Of a DNA stretch of 64,000 bases, positions 17,101 through 28,419 are shown one piece after another. Below the pieces are notes generated by a model. It saw nothing but the letters and a program-made list of their open reading frames with translations. It did no database searches and had not been told where the DNA came from. Both the position numbers and the translations under genes were made by a program. This stretch comes from Styela clava (taxonomy: Eukaryota). The first letter of the stretch is position 1. Each line of letters opens with the position of its first letter. The DNA lies in contig NC_135261.1 in NCBI RefSeq assembly GCF_964204865.1, forward strand, positions 18,724,001 through 18,788,000, written 5' to 3'.

Positions 17101-20100
17101 TAATTTTTTTTTATTTGTGTATTGAAATATTGTTCAAAAAGCCGATAAGGATATAGACGATGATCTGTCTGTCTGTCGGTCAATGATATATACATGTCGG
17201 GTATGCAAATTGTTTAGACTTTAAAAATAAATTAATATTAAATAAAAAACTAAACAAACTTCAAGGGTCAGATCGAATTCGTAACCGTATAACATCAGTT
17301 GTCATGTGTATCATGTATCATCAAGGCGGTATCCAGACTCTGCCAAAATTAAATTCATAGTTCTGAAATACTTCTTCACCAATAATCATTCATGCTCTTA
17401 AAATCCGACACAAAAATTAACAGTGAAGTTTTTGTGAGGGAGACTAGAAAAATCACTCAATTCCGTACAATTGTATTCCCTTTCGCAATAATTTGCATTA
17501 TTAGATTTTTTAATATCTCTTTGAATATATATATTTTCTTTATTTTTAGAGTCTTGGGAAATTCATTACTCGTAACGCCAAGTCAATTTTGCACAAGAAC
17601 AAGGTTTTTAAATGCAAGACAACAAGAAATTTGTAGGAATCATTCCCATATTTTAAAATACGTAAGTAGAAATTATAAGAATAATAGAATTTTCACACAA
17701 AGAAAATTTAAGTTTTAGATTCATAAAGTCAAGAAATCTGCTTGCTATTTAATTAATTTCTTTGTTTGTTATTTTTTACACGCTCCCATGTTTAGTATAG
17801 AAATTAAAAATAAATTGTAAAATTTGGGAGACTCTTTTATGTACAACATTGTACACACAATATTACATTAAATCAACTCTCTAACCACCAAACTAATCTG
17901 AAATGCTCTAATTTCAAAAGAATTGAAAGATTTAAAGTTCTGTGAAGAACGATATTCGTCGTATTTAAATATTGATTTCGGATTTCTCGTTTCATGGGCC
18001 ATGACAGTCTATAAAGATCATTATAAAAGTGTGTTGAAATTGTGCATGTTATGATTTTCATTTTCTTACTCGGCCATTCATTAATTTTGCATACCAATTT
18101 TATTGGGTCGAGGGCCATTTGGAATAAAATGAAATACTACAGATCTAAGGCAAAAATGCAATTACTTCTAAACTTCCGATAGACTTGAGTGATATATTGT
18201 TACGTGTTCTATCTAATCAAGGAAAATATTGCAGGTTGAAGAAGGAATAATTCAAGGTTCACATCGTTGTCAAAGAGAGTTCCAGTATAATAAATGGAAC
18301 TGTTCGAGATCTCCTAAAACATATTATAGTCGCTTGTTGAATCAAGGTTAGTCAGATATTTTTACCTGTAGTTACCGGCTTTTAGTAATTTGCTATCTAA
18401 ATGTACTTCGCAAAAGCCACACTCATACGAAATTTCAAGCAGATGTGCCTGGCCAAAAGGTCATGCGTTTCCATCTGTGTAATTTTATCTTCATTTTACA
18501 TCGTATGATGTTTTGATTGATAAACATTGAATTGATTTTTGTTTAAATTTGTATAGTACAAAACACACAGTGTTGTTGAGCACATTTCACTTGTTTCGTG
18601 CCTTCAAACTAGCTATAATTTCAACTACAATATATTCGATGTTTTTTATTTCTCCTATTTAGGCAGATGAAAGTTGTCTTGTAAAAATATGCGTGTGGAA
18701 TTTAGTTGTTTATTTGTCTTACTGAGATTAAGAGCTACCAATGTGTTAATCCGCCAAGTCGTTTGTTTTCTATGGCTGGATAAATGTGGGCCTTGATTAA
18801 AACAGTTTTCAAATAGGCGTAAACACTTTTAAAACACGATATTATCTATGGGTGTCTCCGGGAATAAGATTTAATAAACTAAATTCATAATATAAAAAAT
18901 TAATTTGTTTTCCTAATCGTCACGATTTGACTAAAAATATGTGTCGTCGATTTTTACTTTTAAAAATAAATTCCCCACGAAATTATTATCATTTAGAATC
19001 GATGTCTTGAGCCACCTGCTTAAATTTGATCAAATCATTTTGACATGACCTACGACCCAAATGGATAATAGATTGTCCATTTGTTGCAGATTTATAAAAA
19101 AAAATCTTAGAAGATATAATTTGAAAAATTGTTTATAATTGGACTAACTAAACTAAAATATCATTTTAGATAGTTTTTATTTTCGTTGTGAATACATTAC
19201 ATCGCGCAATTAAAAAACAATTTTATCTCAAATCTTGGAATTTACTATATAGGTATAAGTGTATGGAAACCTAATTAAGTTTATTATGTGTATTTGATGT
19301 AAAAAGTGAAAAACAACAAAATTTTGAGCATTGTTCACATTGTACATTCTATAAACATAAATAAAACCCATTAAAAGATTTCTAACAGAAATTGTGGTTA
19401 GTTATATGTCAAGTTGTTTAATGTATCGTCTCCCAGAACAAGATATTTCATATTTTTAAGACCACCTATAATGTTTGGAGTGAGATCCAATTTCGATAAA
19501 TATTTCTCAAATATAATACCATCGCAAATAAAAATATTTCTAAATACTTATCATTTTGTTGTTCCGCAGAATCGTTTATGCTATATCTTGTTTTTAGAAA
19601 CACGAGTGCAAAAAGCGAGATAAAAATATTTTTTTAAAGAAATGAAAAGCACGTAATCGTGAATTCCCTTATATAGAACATATTTTATTATTATTTTTTG
19701 TGGATTTTACCTTTTTATGTGATAGAATGTCTTTAGTTTTTTGATTCAATCGCATCTGAAATTGATGTTTATCAATTATGTAAATTTATTTTTATGGGAT
19801 TTTGGTCAGCTGGCAATAGAACCTGACCGCATCATTGTTGATGCATCATTCAAAAAGGTACAGTATAGGACACTTCTAGTTGAAGCTAACAAAATAACTA
19901 AATATTATTATGCGATTGAAATACGTTCAATTGCAGACCCACTTTATACCTGTATATTACTGAGCCAAGACCAAACTACTTAATCACAAAGTTAAGCTAG
20001 ATCACTTTTAGGTCGAACCTAAAACTTATAAAGTTGATTTATATTTCATGGAGTTTTTATTCAATGAAATGACTATCAATATTCCCAACTAATAAGATTT

Positions 20101-23100: not shown

Positions 23101-26100
23101 TTTCCTCATAAAATATAAAAAAAATTTTGATCATTTCCGAATAAATGAATAAAAATTTGAAAAGCAGCTTTTTATTTTCTTCAGTCGTGTTTGAGTTCAT
23201 CCAAAGGTTTTATTAAGACATTTCTGCTGGCAAAAGAAAAAATATTATGTTATAAATATTAATATTAACCAATATCAATTAATAATAATTTCAGTATAAA
23301 TAATTTTGAAGGAATAATATAAATTCGAAAGTTTGCAAATATTTGAAACATGTTTTTAACGTATCTTTGTAACTCAGACGTGTTTTGTATAAGCATATAT
23401 ATTTGATACGACTTATTTATCTTAAAACATTAATAGACGACAATATATGTGGTGTAAAACATTTTTTATAGTATATCGGTATCAATTTACGTAAAGATGT
23501 ATATAATTCCATAAAAGTTTGTTAGCGTTTAGGCAAGTTCGTTTCACATTTGTCATTCATGGGTTATTGAATAGTCGATTTTGATAAAAGACAAATCATC
23601 CACCATTATACGAGGAAAAAATAAATCGACCAACTCTTAAGAGATTCATACAGAATGATAGCATCGCAGTCATATAATTTTCTACCACGCTGCTCTTCAT
23701 TTTTACCGATACTGCGATTGATTATCGCATGCAACTTCAAACAGAGTTGGGTCTTCCTCACTGAGTGCTCGTGACCTGAATTTTAAATTATTGTTATTAT
23801 ACATATATTGAAAGGCTGTAAACTTGCTTCTATACTCGCTCATCCCTGATTCTTATTGGTTCAATTTTGTTTAGATATTCGAGAAACTGCATACGTTAAT
23901 GCAATGATGTCAGCGGCAGTAACTTACGCTGTGACGTACGCGTGTTCGAAGGGCGAAATTCCAGATTGCGGATGTGAAGAGAATTCGATCACAAGTTACG
24001 AATTACTCAAACAAGTAAGTTAGAATATACATCTGCTAAATTAAGGTCAAAGGCCGAACGTTTTGTTTTTCACCTGTCATGGTGGCACCCAAAATCATTC
24101 GATTGAGTATTATTTTAAAGTATACAAAATTATATCCATGTTTATAGGAAGCTATAAAGCGCAATTACAAAACTACTGAGGAAAATCTTCGAAAAGTTGC
24201 AGCAGAATTTGAATGGGGAGGTTGCGGAGATCAAATTGAATATGGAGACAGAATTTCCAGACTTTTCACAGAAAATTTTGGCAGAAAATTCCAAAGTAGT
24301 GACCTCAAAGCTAAAATTGAAATACACAATATGGAAGCTGGAAGGCTGGTACGTAGAATTATACTTTTCATTCAAACATATTGTCATAGTATACAATCGT
24401 GAATTATAATTAAGGAGCATACAATATTATTTCAATTGAAAATTGAAGTTTCAAACATTACCCTCTTTGGATGAAGTGTTTAAAGTAGAGGTTCCCAGTC
24501 TTTTATGGCCCTTATCCGACTTTCATCACTCATGCCGCCCCTGTTTAAAATTTTAATGGTATTTATAGTGTTGTTTTTATTGGTAGATTCCAAATCCCAT
24601 AACGTTCAAAATATTCATACTCAACAAAGTAAAAACACTCGGTGAAATAACCTCATCAAGCAACAAAACTAAAAAAAACGAGCAGTTTTCTTGGTAAAGG
24701 TAAACCGCGCCCAGCATTGTGACCCCCCTTAAACTGCTTTGTGTCCCTCTTGGAGGCCACGGGCCTCCGGTTGGGAACACTGATTTAAAGCATAAAATTT
24801 GATGCTATCGTATGGCATTTTTATGAACGCGAAAGATTTCGAAATACTGCATCTAAATAGGCTTTCAAATTGATAATTTCCGTTTTATTTTGACGGTTTG
24901 AAATCTATTAACACGTTCACAAAATAATATTCTGTACTTGGAATTATGATACTTGATACTCAGTTAGGTATGACAGGATCGAAACGTGATATAAATCATG
25001 GAGACCGAATAGTAATAATAATTTTATCAGACCAAAGCAATGATTATGATTAAAAATTTGGGCTCAATTACAAATTTTATATATATGTTTGTACTGGTAC
25101 GTTTTGTTGCATCTTCTATGTTTAGTAAACGTGCTACGCCAGTGAAAAAAAAGATAAAAATAGTCGGGGTATGCGAAAAATGTTACTGATCACAAGTTTA
25201 TTCATATTTTACAAATATTCAGTATCACAACAAATACTTTTTAGTGTGTATTATCAGATATATAGTAGAGATAATTTCCGTAATTTTCAAAAAAAGAGAA
25301 TTAGGAAAGAGAGTGAACATTGCAAAAAAAAATTTACGCCGATAATTAGGAGAAAAAAATGCTTCGTGTACGAGCCAAATTTGATGTCGGATCTGATGTT
25401 TGAATGGAGCAAATTCATTTTATGAATGAAAGAACATTCATTCTAGTGGTGTGGCATTGTGTAATAGATTGACCAGTTTTGAAAATAAAATGATAAAAGC
25501 CAGTCAATTTCGGGCTCAAATTCGCCTTACCATATAATAAAAGATAGCCTAGAACGCCAACATGAATATTTTTTTTTAATTTTTGCATTTCATTTCAGGC
25601 AATAACAAATCACATGAGAAGAGATTGTAGATGCCACGGAATCACAGGTACTTGTGCATTGCAAACTTGTTGGGATAGAATGCCGAAGTGGCAGGATGTT
25701 GGTAACCGATTACGAAACCATTTCGATGGTGCGGTTCGGGTACAACTGGCAAACGACGGCCGTTCTCTGCTACCAAAACGGAAACAACGAATTGCACTAA
25801 AACAGTATCCATATCCGAGAAGGCCTTATCCAGATGCGACATTGAACCGGTATAAGCGCAATTCTCCAGAAATTTATACCACTCGAACCAGCACCGGTGC
25901 AGCAAACATAGAAAGACGTGAAACAGAGAGACGAAGACGACGAAGAAAATTTAAGACTAAGGGTCTGAGACGTCGAAGAGGCGGAGATCGTGGGAGCGCA
26001 CTTGAGGATGAAAACCTAGTGTACTCTCAAGAATCGCCAGATTTTTGTAAGAGAAATCGGAAAAATGGAAGTTTGGGTACCATAGGTCGAAGATGTATAC

Positions 26101-26264
26101 CGAATTCTACAGGAGCTGGGAGTTGCGAATATTTGTGTTGCGGCAGAACTTATCAAGAACACGTTATCACAGTAACGAAGGACTGCAATTGCAGATTTGA
26201 ATATTGTTGTAAACTAGTTTGCGATAAGTGCACGTCGCAAGAAACTGTTCATACTTGTGACTGA
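7014..26264 (+). CDS. Wnt6: Wnt6-like secreted signalling protein, 6 coding exons: 7014-8158, 17550-17661, 18235-18346, 23875-24014, 24148-24348, 25599-26264 (791 aa from ATG 7014; 461 aa from the alternative ATG 8004)
   Basis: The exons join in frame through GT-AG introns (phases 2,0,1,0,0). The translation has 24 Wnt-pattern cysteines and the motifs CQREFQYNKWNCS, DIRETAYVNA, FEWGGCGD, HNMEAGRL, CRCHGITGTCALQTCW, NDGRSLLP, LVYSQESPDFC and CEYLCCGR. DIRETA, GGCGD, SRLF and NDGxxLLP match recalled vertebrate WNT6. The start codon is uncertain. Confidence 0.9.
13274..13908. mobile_element. Non-autonomous hAT (Charlie-like) element
   Basis: 15-bp TIRs CAGGGTCGTCCAACC / GGTTGGACTACCCTG and 8-bp TSD TCCTAGAT/TTCTAGAT (NTCTAGAN-type target). 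Confidence 0.85.
17550..17661 (+). CDS. Wnt6: Wnt6 exon 2 (VLGNSLLVTPSQFCTRTRFLNARQQEICRNHSHILKY)
   Basis: TTTTTAG acceptor and GTAAGT donor. Encodes the first two Wnt cysteines, similar to WNT6 AVGSPLVMDP..IC...QAELC. Confidence 0.9.
18235..18346 (+). CDS. Wnt6: Wnt6 exon 3 (VEEGIIQGSHRCQREFQYNKWNCSRSPKTYYSRLLNQ)
   Basis: TTGCAG acceptor and GTTAGT donor. Contains the Wnt CQxxF..WNCS motif. Confidence 0.92.
21063..21274. mobile_element. MITE family A, subfamily B
   Basis: Same termini and GAACTAAAATAAGGAAA..TTATGGCCTAACCCTAAC core as family A. Reverse complement of the copies at 33654 and 63567. Confidence 0.82.
23875..24014 (+). CDS. Wnt6: Wnt6 exon 4 (DIRETAYVNAMMSAAVTYAVTYACSKGEIPDCGC...)
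   Basis: TTTAG acceptor and GTAAGT donor. Contains the RETA..A...A...AVT.ACS.G...CGC Wnt motif. Confidence 0.95.
24148..24348 (+). CDS. Wnt6: Wnt6 exon 5 (...FEWGGCGDQIEYGDRISRLF...IHNMEAGRL)
   Basis: TATAG acceptor and GTACGT donor. Contains the WGGC and HNxxAGR motifs. The reading frame differs from the listed ORF 24197-24409. Confidence 0.95.
24486..24782. mobile_element. hAT (Charlie-like) MITE in Wnt6 intron 5
   Basis: TAGAGGTTCCCA / TGGGAACACTG termini and TSD GTTTAAAG/ATTTAAAG. Confidence 0.72.
25599..26264 (+). CDS. Wnt6: Wnt6 terminal exon 6 (thumb hairpin, expanded linker, cysteine-rich C-terminal domain, stop)
   Basis: TTTCAG acceptor. Matches ORF 25614-26264 and ends at TGA 26262-26264. 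Confidence 0.97.
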   Translation, partial: AITNHMRRDCRCHGITGTCALQTCWDRMPKWQDVGNRLRNHFDGAVRVQLANDGRSLLPKRKQRIALKQYPYPRRPYPDATLNRYKRNSPEIYTTRTSTGAANIERRETERRRRRRKFKTKGLRRRRGGDRGSALEDENLVYSQESPDFCKRNRKNGSLGTIGRRCIPNSTGAGSCEYLCCGRTYQEHVITVTKDCNCRFEYCCKLVCDKCTSQETVHTCD

Positions 26265-26756
26265 TATGGCACTGGTTAGCAAAAAGGACAAGAACAGAAC
26301 GAGAAAATGCGTGCATCGCATTAAACGGAACGAAGCGTCAAGCCTTTCGATAATGAAGGAAGCAGTTATCGTCTCTCTTGTAAACAAGTTGAAAGTGGAC
26401 ATCTCATCGAGTGACGATTTGGATGCGGCAAGATGGCCATTGTCTGGTTTAAGCAAACGCGGTTGAAGGATTTTATCCCTTTGACTGTTCCTTCGTGATG
26501 GAAATATGTTCTAAAGGCCTGGACGCCGTGGTAGTTTGTCAGAATCATAGAAAACTAAAATAATAGCATTGAAATTACTAATTCAAACGGTATTCAAATA
26601 TTTGGATCAATGCAATTATCAGATGGTAGTCGAATAGCTAGCTAGGTGCTGCTGCACTCCAACAATACATTTTTTTGACGACTTATAAACTTAAAGTAAA
26701 TTATTTAACATCAGCATTCGGAGAAATCTTATCTGTATCGGTGATCGACACATAAG

Positions 26757-26762
26757 AATAAA
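26757..26762 (+). other. Candidate Wnt6 polyadenylation signal AATAAA
   Basis: First AATAAA I found downstream of the stop codon. The hexamer is common in AT-rich DNA. Confidence 0.3.
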
Positions 26763-28419
26763 TCTTTTCCAGGAAGGGGTTTTATAGTTAAAGTATGAGC
26801 ATTTGAAGTAAAATATCGTACATATTCTTGATTCACTTAAAATGAGAATTTCGCCCAAATTATTTATTTGTTTTTGTTGTAACGGGGTAGTAAACAGTCA
26901 CGAAATGCAAAAAGGGTAAACTGCATGAAGAGTCTGTATTATAAATGAAGACTGTATGAACTATATCACGGTAAACTATTGATCTGAATTTTATTGTTCA
27001 TAGTTAAATCGTTTGGGCATTTGAATCTATCCTGTCAACATTCTGCCATATCTAGAAAGAAAAACAAATTATATAAACTTGCCTTCTCAATCAACTTCAA
27101 AACTTACTCTAGCGCCAATCTTATTGTTGAGTTTCCTTCGTAGATCAGGCTATACACAATCTTGCTTCGCAAATAATATTGTTTATGAAATATAGTTTAT
27201 GAGTATGCTTACAGTATTCGAATTGACTCATATTGCATCAAATGTGAGTTAAGGTGGAAAGGAGATATTGTCATATTGATTTTGACTACATGAGAACCAA
27301 GATGAATTAAATCCACAGCAACATAGATGCACATTTTGAGTTTCATCACGCTTTTTTGTTGTAAGTGGGGTTATAAGTTACCACAATAAGTACTATTATG
27401 AAATTATTGTGGCAACGCAATCTTTTAACACATCATTTTGAATACATAATGTTACTTTTTTATTTAAACGATAAATTGCCAGACTAATACGAACTAGTTA
27501 GTTTTCTTTACTTCCGTTTACGACTTGTATGATATTCGAGTTTTTCATAATTGCATTGTTGAATGACGTACTTTTCTTTTTATTTATTTTGATTTCAATT
27601 TCCGTTTACATTATTTCTTACTTTGAATTCATCTTTACTTCTAATATTGTAATTTATTTTCGACAATGACTGACAGCTTGCTTGTGACATAAAATATTAA
27701 AACAACTCAATACATCGCATTTATTGGCTGAGAGTGTCAAAACTGGTACTGTGTTACGCCTTTATGTCCTCTCCTCATACCATTGATTTTTAACATCAAT
27801 ATAAGCCGTATATTGTTATGGTTGTCAAGAGTAGAATACCGGTATGTAGGTAGGTATTTCCACCTTACGGAAGATTGCTTACTTTCCTTTTTGTTGTTGT
27901 TTCCTTATCGTACAAATCACACACTTTTGGCTATAGAAAAGGTCGCAATATTTTGTCATGGCATATTATTCCAATGTTTCAATATTCGCACCAAGGTAGG
28001 TAAGATGTACAGGGAATTGAGTAGTTTGGCAGGTATTTAGGAACATAAATATCATGTGGACGGGAGAGACAGATGTTTTTTGATCATCTTCCTGCTCTGA
28101 CAACACCAGAACTGTGAATAAATGAAACGCGTAAATATTCATGGTACATAGTTTATAGCATAGGTAAATATTTTCGGGTTTATTCTCCAAATGTAAACAA
28201 ATATGTGTGACTATATACATGCATGAGGCTGTACACGCATGCAGATAAACCTCCGAACGCTGAAAGTACGTTTTATAGTATTTCACATTACACAAGCCTC
28301 GCAATTGCGCAGAGACAAATTTGAGAAGAAAGGCGGTGGACGACAGTGGGGCACGTAAGTGAGTGAGTAGTGTATTATGTACGTAGCTAGGCAGGTTCAG
28401 TTGTTAGACTCACAGTATG

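What the first reader, a model, noticed from the sequence alone, without database searches (positions are those of the whole stretch)
25626..25655. Porcupine acylation-site serine replaced by threonine (CRCHGITGTC)
Seen: the thumb hairpin reads CRCHG-I-T-G-T-C (ACA at 25644, ACT at 25650). Established: the family consensus is C[KR]CHGxSGSC, and the first Ser (S209 in Wnt3a) carries the palmitoleate needed for Wntless transport, Frizzled site-1 binding and Notum removal. Inference: this is either a natural Thr-O-acylated Wnt with altered PORCN/Notum kinetics or a poorly lipidated Wnt. Two Ser-to-Thr changes in one motif make a single sequencing error unlikely.
Basis: partly seen in the sequence, partly recalled or inferred. 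Interest (0 to 1): 0.75.

Follow-up and report, generated by a model that had tools for sequence, protein, structure and literature searches.

The report
Threonine at a Wnt6 lipid site
A sea-squirt-type Wnt6 signalling gene really has threonine instead of the usual serine where Wnt proteins receive their lipid, but the same swap is common in its closest relatives, so it is a mild natural variant.

Summary
Window 25626-25655 (+) reads CRCHGITGTC, with ACA at 25644 and ACT at 25650. Independent contigs, one of them a spliced transcript contig, carry the same letters.

The motif lies in the last exon (25599-26264) of an intact, expressed Wnt gene (Pfam wnt, E 5.2e-49). This exon falls in a well-supported clade with named ascidian proteins: Ciona NP_001071795, Phallusia "Orphan Wnt e" and Clavelina "Wnt-6-like". 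That clade groups with Wnt6.

Threonine is not peculiar to this gene:
- In the clade, 14 rows have a readable site: 7 Thr, 6 Ser, 1 Cys. That needs 3-4 changes on the tree.
- Three other Wnt paralogues of the same genome also carry Thr.
- The second Ser-to-Thr change in the motif is commonplace.

The site admits only Ser, Thr or Cys over about 17 substitutions per site of tree length. The genome also keeps Porcupine and Wntless homologues. I therefore judge that this Thr is most likely O-acylated like Ser. That is inferred, not shown, and altered kinetics are untested.

Verdict: real, conservative, lineage-recurrent and of low to moderate interest.

The parts
25644..25646 (+). ACA codon: Thr at the position of the Porcupine acyl-acceptor Ser
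   Evidence: Aligned with the Ser of CKCHGVSGSC in Wnt-5a chain 9z67_A. No variant in 4 runs.
25626..25655 (+). Thumb (hairpin 2) motif CRCHGITGTC
   Evidence: All four cysteines of CRCHGITGTCALQTC, plus H and G, are kept. The Lys of the usual C-x-x-K-x-C is Gln here.
25650..25652 (+). ACT codon: second Ser-to-Thr change, at +2 from the acceptor
   Evidence: Thr or Ala at this place is frequent in other Wnts.
25599..26264 (+). Last coding exon (221 codons plus TGA stop): thumb hairpin, linker and C-terminal cysteine-knot domain
   Evidence: Pfam PF00110, E 5.2e-49, profile positions 152-304 of 305. Acceptor AG at 25597-25598. Covered by the spliced contig of run X5.
24349..25598 (+). Intron (GT..AG). 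It holds a very high-copy short repeat at about 24557-24663.
   Evidence: Joint 24347->25598, 'skips 1250, GT..AG (cut +1)', in an X5 contig. Depth up to 170331 in the bin 24505-24605.
24148..24348 (+). Preceding exon (..FEWGGCGDQIEYG..HNMEAGRL)
   Evidence: Open segment. X5 contig piece 24148-24347. tblastn with the ascidian orthologues.
23874..24000 (+). Exon (..ETAYVNAMMSAAVTYAVTYACSKGEIPDCGC..). The ends are approximate.
   Evidence: Boundaries were not confirmed by reads.
18217..18345 (+). Exon matching the RWNC region of the ascidian orthologues. The ends are approximate.
   Evidence: tblastn with P0011, P0034 and P0038. Not confirmed by reads.
25776..26012 (+). Arg/Lys-rich linker insertion shared with the ascidian-type clade
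Evidence: Alignment A2. Not studied further.

Best explanation
This is the thumb hairpin of an ascidian-type Wnt6 ligand. The acyl-acceptor Ser has been replaced by Thr through a one-base change (TCN to ACN). The change is fixed, transcribed and lineage-recurrent.

The most likely mechanism is the ordinary one. The genome's Porcupine homologue transfers palmitoleate to the Thr hydroxyl in the ER. Wntless then carries the lipidated protein, and the lipid inserts into the Frizzled CRD groove.

Shown: the residue, its homology to the acceptor Ser, its recurrence among relatives, the constraint on the site, and the presence of Porcupine and Wntless homologues.

Inferred: that Thr is actually acylated, and any quantitative difference from Ser. 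A secondary alcohol would be expected to be acylated and hydrolysed more slowly.
For: - Sequence and reads.
- Wnt family.
- Placement in a clade with named ascidian proteins: support 99* in a 158-row tree, 100/95* in a 39-row tree and 99/95* in a 40-row tree. In the last, a 97/92* split puts the 14 clade rows with 9 of 10 Wnt6-named rows, apart from the Wnt1, 3, 4, 5, 7, 10 and 2-like rows.
- Site states among the 14 clade rows with a readable site: Thr 7, Ser 6, Cys 1. The fewest changes are 3, or 4 when the site's columns are left out of the tree.
- These 14 rows span 17.0 substitutions per site, yet only nucleophilic residues occur. A subclade whose 5 readable rows are all Thr spans 6.8.
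- By contrast, two paralogues of the same genome that have lost the site carry Lys (CVCHGLKDSC, CKCHGLKESC).
- Flanking hairpin cysteines, H and G are kept, and all 12 C-terminal cysteines of the last exon are present.
- The genome has a 502-aa Porcupine homologue (E 7e-87, covering 10-462 of 464 of chain 7URA). It keeps the residues aligned with catalytic H335, N300, W299 and S331 (numbering from passages of PMC12612157).
- The genome also has a Wntless homologue (E 2.8e-129).
- Precedent in the same enzyme family: bullfrog ghrelin carries an octanoylated Thr3, and mammalian GOAT acylates Thr3 at a reduced level (passage in PMC8316800).
- Recalled, not seen here: mutagenesis papers (Rios-Esteves 2014; Miranda 2014) reported that Ser-to-Thr at this site remains acylated by Porcupine while Cys does not.
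Against: - No direct evidence of lipidation exists for this protein or for any natural Thr-site Wnt that I could find. The papers on Thr tolerance were not held, so that point rests on recall.
- The clade is strongly derived. It has a long branch and an Arg/Lys-rich linker insertion. Gln or another residue replaces the Lys of C-x-x-K-x-C. Tyr or Phe replaces the fingertip Trp. Lipid dependence could therefore be relaxed.
- One orthologue (Clavelina) has Cys at the site. By my recollection Porcupine does not acylate Cys.
- Ser, Thr and Ala are among the commonest exchanges in general. Three or four changes that all stay within Ser/Thr/Cys are therefore only moderate evidence of selection for a nucleophile.
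- GOAT handles Thr less well than Ser.
Confidence: 0.65

Rival explanations
1. The Thr is poorly acylated or not acylated. This ascidian Wnt6 lineage then works with reduced or no lipid, as Drosophila WntD does, perhaps relying on its basic linker or its long leader for trafficking and surface retention.
For: - Derived features of the clade: linker insertion, loss of the C-x-x-K-x-C Lys, and a changed fingertip.
I did not test it.
- Cys at the site in Clavelina.
- GOAT acylates Thr less well than Ser (PMC8316800).
- WntD is secreted without lipid (passages of PMC10112924).
- The same genome tolerates Wnt5-type copies with Lys at the site.
Against: - Only Ser, Thr or Cys occur at the site over about 17 substitutions per site. 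A subclade with 5 readable rows keeps Thr over 6.8. Free drift would be expected to bring in Ala, Asn, Gly or Lys, as in the Lys-site paralogues.
- The CHG and hairpin cysteines that frame the acceptor are intact.
- Porcupine and Wntless homologues are present and look functional.
Confidence: 0.27
2. The Thr is used for a different modification, such as O-glycosylation or phosphorylation in the secretory pathway, instead of acylation.
For: Thr is a good acceptor for mucin-type O-glycosylation, and the motif has two Thr residues. There is no direct evidence.
Against: - The position toggles freely with Ser and sits in an otherwise canonical Porcupine hairpin.
- Nothing in the flanks resembles a known kinase or glycosylation context that I tested.
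- No tool here addresses the question.
Confidence: 0.05
3. Artefact: an assembly or sequencing error, or a decaying pseudogene copy.
For: None found. Raw-read depth at the site was low in the one raw-read run (X15, about 2.3x).
Against: - Identical letters in contigs of three runs from three studies, including a correctly spliced transcript contig.
- The exon is open, with all conserved cysteines and a strong Pfam score.
- Relatives carry the same Thr.
Confidence: 0.02

Closest known systems
Canonical Ser-acylated Wnts (Wnt3a Ser209, WNT3 Ser212, WNT8A Ser186; passages of PMC10112924)
   Same: Same fold family (Pfam wnt). Same hairpin framework C-x-C-H-G-x-[acceptor]-G-x-C, with the acceptor at the aligned position. 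The same machinery, Porcupine and Wntless, is present in the genome.
   Different: The acceptor is Thr, not Ser. The Lys of C-x-x-K-x-C is Gln. The fingertip Trp is Tyr. A basic insertion lies in the linker.
Ascidian 'orphan Wnt e' / Wnt-6-like proteins: Ciona intestinalis NP_001071795.1, Ciona savignyi H2ZB89, Phallusia mammillata CAB3267762.1, Clavelina lepadiformis XP_076822536.1
   Same: Same clade. All share the basic linker insertion, and these proteins have long N-terminal leaders.
   Different: The named ones carry Ser (Ciona x2, Phallusia) or Cys (Clavelina) at the acceptor. Thr is seen in the window's gene and in six unnamed relatives: P0005, P0008, P0021, P0076, P0079 and P0177.
Ghrelin Thr3 octanoylation by GOAT, another protein-acylating MBOAT (PMC8316800)
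   Same: A natural Ser-to-Thr switch of an MBOAT acyl acceptor in some lineages, with the modification kept.
   Different: A different enzyme, lipid and substrate. The mammalian enzyme handles Thr less efficiently. Nothing comparable has been measured for Porcupine in any paper I could read.
Lipid-free Wnts: Drosophila WntD (PMC10112924) and the Lys-site Wnt5-type copies of this same genome
   Same: Departure from the consensus acceptor Ser.
   Different: Those have no hydroxyl or thiol at the site. Here a hydroxyl is kept and is conserved across relatives.

Membership tests
Wnt family (PF00110) | Significant match to the family profile | tested here: met
   Last exon: E 5.2e-49, 167.8 bits against a cut-off of 20.3, profile positions 152-304 of 305. 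Upstream exons match profile positions 61-101 and 95-168.
Wnt family (PF00110) | Conserved cysteine framework of the thumb hairpin and C-terminal domain | tested here: met
   Four cysteines in CRCHGITGTCALQTC and 12 in the C-terminal part of the exon. These columns are invariant or nearly so in alignments A2 and A3.
Wnt family (PF00110) | Ser as acyl acceptor in C[KR]CHGxSGSC | tested here: not met
   Thr (ACA) stands at the aligned position. Ser is not universal in the family. The 138 motif matches among 152 relatives were Ser 130, Thr 7, Cys 1. Among 107 further proteins they were Ser 89, Thr 3, Cys 1, with 14 showing no motif.
Wnt family (PF00110) | N-terminal signal peptide / secretion | not tested
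The first exons were not analysed here.
Wnt6 subfamily | The nearest named relatives are Wnt6 | tested here: met
   After the ascidian-type rows, the named top hits are Wnt-6 or Wnt-6-like: Aplysia, Myxine and Tubulanus, and many more in the profile search. Wnt-1 follows.
Wnt6 subfamily | Groups with Wnt6 in a tree that holds other subfamilies | tested here: met
   A 97/92* split puts 14 ascidian-type rows with 9 of 10 Wnt6-named rows, apart from the Wnt1 (6 rows), Wnt4 (5) and single Wnt3, 5, 7, 10 and 2-like rows. One mite 'Wnt-6-like' row falls on the other side. Limits: last-exon region only, no Wnt2, 8, 9, 11, 16 or A references, and the 158-row tree leaves the relation open.
Wnt6 subfamily | Synteny with Wnt9 and/or Wnt3, as reported for Ciona (PMC6060547, passage) | tested here: inconclusive
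   A second Wnt gene lies about 82 kb downstream on the same strand (C16:18831913-18837060). Its subfamily could not be settled with the sequences on hand.
Porcupine substrate | Disulfide-framed hairpin with CHG before the acceptor and a hydroxyl residue at the tip | tested here: met
   The hydroxyl is on Thr.
Porcupine substrate | The enzyme and its partner Wntless are present in the same genome | tested here: met
   Porcupine homologue L034:1180-2685, E 7e-87 to 7URA, with the residues aligned to H335, N300, W299 and S331 kept. Wntless homologue L040, E 2.8e-129.
Porcupine substrate | Actual palmitoleoylation of the acceptor | not testable with these tools
   This needs labelling or mass spectrometry.

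The most novel reading that the evidence does not exclude
Ascidian Wnt6 has switched its lipid acceptor repeatedly among Ser, Thr and even Cys. The tunicate Porcupine would then have a broader acceptor specificity than the mammalian enzyme. The Thr ester, being more hindered, would tune how fast the lipid is put on and how long it survives. This would matter most if the genome truly lacks a Notum-type deacylase, as the blank hints.
Probability: 0.15. Interest if true: 0.55.

Novelty: new member of a known kind. Interest (0 to 1): 0.3.

Why it matters
The acyl-acceptor Ser is usually treated as invariant in lipidated Wnts. Here natural Wnts carry Thr at that place, and one relative carries Cys. 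The cases are this gene, three further paralogues of the same genome, half of the ascidian Wnt6-type relatives that could be read, and a jellyfish Wnt.

Together they form a ready-made natural panel for asking what Porcupine, Wntless, Frizzled and Notum tolerate at the acceptor. They also warn annotation pipelines not to call a Thr-site Wnt lipid-free. The change is conservative and most probably functionally silent, so the biological weight is modest.

Tried and rejected
**Sequencing error.** Rejected.

**Pseudogene.** Rejected. The exon is open, the gene is spliced and transcribed, and the cysteines are conserved.

**Thr unique to this gene.** Rejected.

**The double Ser-to-Thr change as a special signal.** Rejected. 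Thr or Ala at +2 is common.

**Literature.**
- All 10 paper searches found no open paper stating that Porcupine acylates Thr, and none describing a natural Thr-site Wnt. That is the full extent of my claim that I found nothing in print.
- The key papers were not held: Rios-Esteves 2014, Miranda 2014, Lee 2019, Asciolla 2017, Liu 2022 and a Resh review whose id I had guessed. What I say of them is recall.
- The two tunicate Wnt surveys (PMC6060547, PMC8220140) do not contain the words serine, threonine, palmito-, Porcupine or lipid.
- The renaming of "orphan" ascidian Wnts is in Additional file 1, Table S1 of PMC6060547, and the clusters are in Table S3. They could settle the Wnt6 name and the synteny.

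**Word-index protein searches.**
- With the single exon: only 3 hits among 42 candidates.
- With the full-length ascidian alignment: 6 hits among 4175 candidates, and not even all of its own members came back.
- The profile of the clade's C-terminal parts worked better.

**Other attempts.**
- The species of the unnamed relatives (P0004 and others) could not be found.
- The neighbour gene's subfamily stayed inconclusive.
- PDB holds no Wnt6, so it could not classify the protein.
- The Notum-family search was blank. The search runs exon by exon in six frames and cannot show absence.
- The organism name Styela clava comes only from other agents' notes. My results fit a stolidobranch ascidian: the nearest named relatives are ascidian, and there is a tandem array of at least a dozen Wnt copies on contig C10. 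PMC6060547 section 7 describes Wnt5 tandem arrays in that order. I tested neither the name nor that the C10 copies are Wnt5.
Full report
**Observation.** The window reads TGT AGA TGC CAC GGA ATC ACA GGT ACT TGT at 25626-25655 on the + strand, which is CRCHGITGTC. The motif lies 9 codons into an open exon that starts after an AG at 25597-25598 and runs to a TGA at 26262-26264.

**Reads.** I laid four runs on 24000-27000. None shows another letter anywhere in 25626-25655.
- A 394-nt contig of X3 covers 25549-25942 with 0 other letters.
- A 2117-nt contig of X5, from a different study, covers 25598-27000. It joins 24347 to 25598 across a GT..AG intron, so it is a spliced transcript. Its three other letters are at 26012, 26694 and 26924.
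- A 151-nt contig of X14, labelled as another organism, covers 25553-25703 with 0 other letters.
- The only raw-read run (X15, Hi-C) has about 2.3x depth there, below the 3-read listing threshold, so it adds little.
- X3 may belong to the assembly's own project. X5 and X14 do not.

The codons are therefore real, and the gene is transcribed and spliced.

**The gene.**
- The last exon scores E 5.2e-49 against Pfam wnt, profile positions 152-304 of 305.
- Upstream exons were located by the genome-wide family search, by open segments and by tblastn with three ascidian proteins. They lie at about 18217-18345, 23874-24000 and 24148-24348.
Every search used the last exon alone or alignments headed by it.
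- All four hairpin cysteines, the H and G, and all 12 cysteines of the C-terminal part are present.
- In a solved Wnt-5a chain the Thr aligns with the Ser of CKCHGVSGSC.

**Which Wnt.** A full HMMER scan of 1.84 billion representatives found 1991 proteins at E <= 0.001, of which the best 150 were listed.
- The best hits are unnamed fragments. Among the named ones are Phallusia mammillata "Orphan Wnt e", Clavelina lepadiformis "Wnt-6-like" and Ciona intestinalis NP_001071795.1. These are followed by Wnt-6-like proteins of Aplysia, Myxine and Tubulanus, and then by Wnt-1.
- A profile of the clade's C-terminal parts found 268 proteins at E <= 1e-15 among 2052 candidates. Most named top hits are Wnt-6.
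- In a 158-row quick tree the window's exon sits in a 15-row clade (SH-aLRT 99) with the three named ascidian proteins. Its relation to other groups is open there.
- In a careful 40-row tree with named references, a 97/92 split puts the 14 ascidian-type rows with 9 of 10 Wnt6-named rows. On the other side are Wnt1 (6 rows), Wnt4 (5) and single Wnt3, 5, 7, 10 and 2-like rows. One mite "Wnt-6-like" row also falls on that other side.
- Several subfamilies (Wnt2, 8, 9, 11, 16, A) had no named reference, so I hold the Wnt6 label as well supported but not exhaustive.
- PMC6060547 reports a Wnt9-Wnt6-Wnt3 cluster in Ciona (passage). Here a second Wnt lies about 82 kb downstream on the same strand, but I could not name it.

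**How common is Thr at the acceptor.**
- In the clade, 14 rows have a readable site.
  - Thr in 7: the window, P0005, P0008, P0021, P0076, P0079 and P0177.
  - Ser in 6: P0004, P0011 Phallusia, P0026, P0038 Ciona intestinalis, P0172 Ciona savignyi and P0192.
  - Cys in 1: P0034 Clavelina.
  - Six further rows are cut before the site.
- The nearest relative of the window's protein, P0004, has Ser (CRCHGISASC). It is 54-61% identical, depending on the columns compared.
- The fewest changes on the careful 39-row tree are 3. With the site's columns left out of the tree they are 4. Thr therefore arose at least twice, or arose once and reverted.
- The 15 other Wnt6 rows and 4 Wnt1 rows in that tree all have Ser.
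- Among the 152 proteins held after the first two protein searches, the motif pattern matched 138 times: Ser 130, Thr 7, Cys 1. Fifteen proteins had no match.
- Among 107 later proteins the counts were Ser 89, Thr 3, Cys 1, with 14 showing no match.
- Thr also occurs outside tunicates, for example in a jellyfish "Wnt-2-like" protein (P0127/P0171).
- In the window's own genome I read 17 distinct thumb motifs: Ser 11, Thr 4, Lys 2.
  - The Thr copies are this gene, C3:8.005 Mb (CRCHGLTGTC), C3:5.356 Mb (CACHGATGGC) and C18:9.294 Mb (CKCHGKTGSC).
  - The two Lys copies lie in the tandem array on C10.
- The second change of the motif (Thr at +2) is ordinary. Ciona's orthologue, P0007 and the paralogue at L014 have Thr there, and others have Ala.

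**Constraint.**
- The 14 readable clade rows span 17.0 substitutions per site on the tree built without the site, yet show only Ser, Thr or Cys.
- The five readable rows of one subclade are all Thr over 6.8 substitutions per site.
- The site does change, but only among residues that carry a nucleophile.
- Where this genome's Wnt copies really gave up the site, they hold Lys.
- This is moderate evidence that the hydroxyl is needed. It is not strong, because Ser-Thr exchanges are common everywhere.

**Machinery.**
- The genome has an open 502-codon Porcupine homologue on C14. It scores E 7e-87 to human Porcupine 7URA over residues 10-462 of 464.
- In the printed alignment the residues aligned with W299, N300, S331 and the catalytic H335 are kept. 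The numbering is that of passages in PMC12612157, and the 7URA chain is offset by 9.
- A Wntless homologue on C18 scores E 2.8e-129 over 1-504.
- A six-frame search for the family that holds Notum (PF03283) found nothing. That search can miss genes with short exons.

**Literature.**
- I read passages, not whole papers.
- PMC10112924 states that the Wnts analysed so far are mono-palmitoleoylated on the conserved Ser, except WntD, which has no lipid.
- PMC8316800 states that bullfrog ghrelin has Thr at its acylation site, and that human and mouse GOAT acylate Thr3 at a reduced level.
- My recollection is that two 2014 mutagenesis papers found Ser-to-Thr, but not Ser-to-Cys, compatible with Porcupine acylation. 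Those papers were not held. None of my 10 searches found an open paper repeating the point or describing a natural Thr-site Wnt.
- The two tunicate Wnt surveys do not discuss the lipid site.

**Reading.**
- The simplest account is a conservative one-base change of the acceptor codon in a fast-evolving ascidian Wnt6 lineage, with the lipid still attached to the hydroxyl (confidence 0.65).
- The main rival is reduced or absent lipidation in a lineage that has changed in other ways too: a basic linker insertion, loss of the Lys after the hairpin, a changed fingertip, and Cys in one species (0.27).
- Another modification of the Thr (0.05) and artefact (0.02) are unlikely.

**Limits.**
The species of the unnamed relatives, their codons and a structural model are therefore missing.
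- The organism name Styela clava comes from other agents' notes only.
- Supplements of PMC6060547 (Tables S1 and S3) may settle the Wnt6 naming and the synteny. They were closed.

Noticed in passing
G000 C3:8005236-8005694 (L008); C3:5356124-5356627 (L013/L021); C18:9294476-9294766 (L018/L020): Three other Wnt paralogues of the same genome carry Thr at the acceptor: CRCHGLTGTC, CACHGATGGC and CKCHGKTGSC. L008 pairs (support 100) with an unnamed relative, P0072, that also has Thr.
   Followed up: partly
G000 C10:8922062-8922445 (L011) and C10:8903224-8903421 (L029): Two copies in the large tandem Wnt array on C10 have Lys at the acceptor (CVCHGLKDSC, CKCHGLKESC), so they have no lipid site. L011 also lacks the usual fingertip cysteines.
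   Followed up: partly
P0034 (Clavelina lepadiformis XP_076822536.1) and P0216 (unnamed): Cys stands at the acceptor position in the Clavelina Wnt-6-like protein (CKCHGLCGSC; 4 cluster members, under two kinds of accession, XP_ and CAK) and in an unrelated unnamed Wnt fragment (CKCHGICGTC).
   Followed up: no
window 24557-24663 (intron): A short interspersed repeat with very high copy number. Summed word depth reaches 170331 in X3 against about 450-700 in the flanks, and many loose ends start at 24557 and end at about 24600-24663.
   Followed up: no
window 26190-26215 and alignment A2: The fingertip reads CNCRFEYCC, with Tyr where Wnts usually have Trp. Across the clade this residue is Tyr, Phe or another. 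Four relatives (P0005, P0022, P0026, P0192) have lost the fingertip Cys-Cys pair.
   Followed up: no
window 26012: A>G in X15 (3 of 3 reads), X3 and X5. It is the third base of a GAA codon and so synonymous. The assembly carries the allele that these three runs lack.
   Followed up: no
G000 C14:7744674-7745540 (L034) and C18:18261815-18262606 (L040): The Porcupine and Wntless homologues each lie in a single uninterrupted open frame of 532 and 554 codons, so they look intronless.
   Followed up: no
G000, whole genome: There was no six-frame match to PF03283, the family that includes the Wnt deacylase Notum. This may be a true loss or a miss caused by short exons.
   Followed up: no
G000 C16:18831913-18837060 (L015, L025), about 82 kb downstream of the gene: A second Wnt gene on the same strand has a canonical CKCHGVSGSC and its own basic insertion before the C-terminal domain. 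Its subfamily was not resolved.
   Followed up: partly
P0009 (Glandiceps talaboti XP_077998206.1): A 692-aa hemichordate protein made of two tandem Wnt domains. Both have CRCHGFKGC at the thumb, which is one residue shorter and has no Ser or Thr.
   Followed up: no
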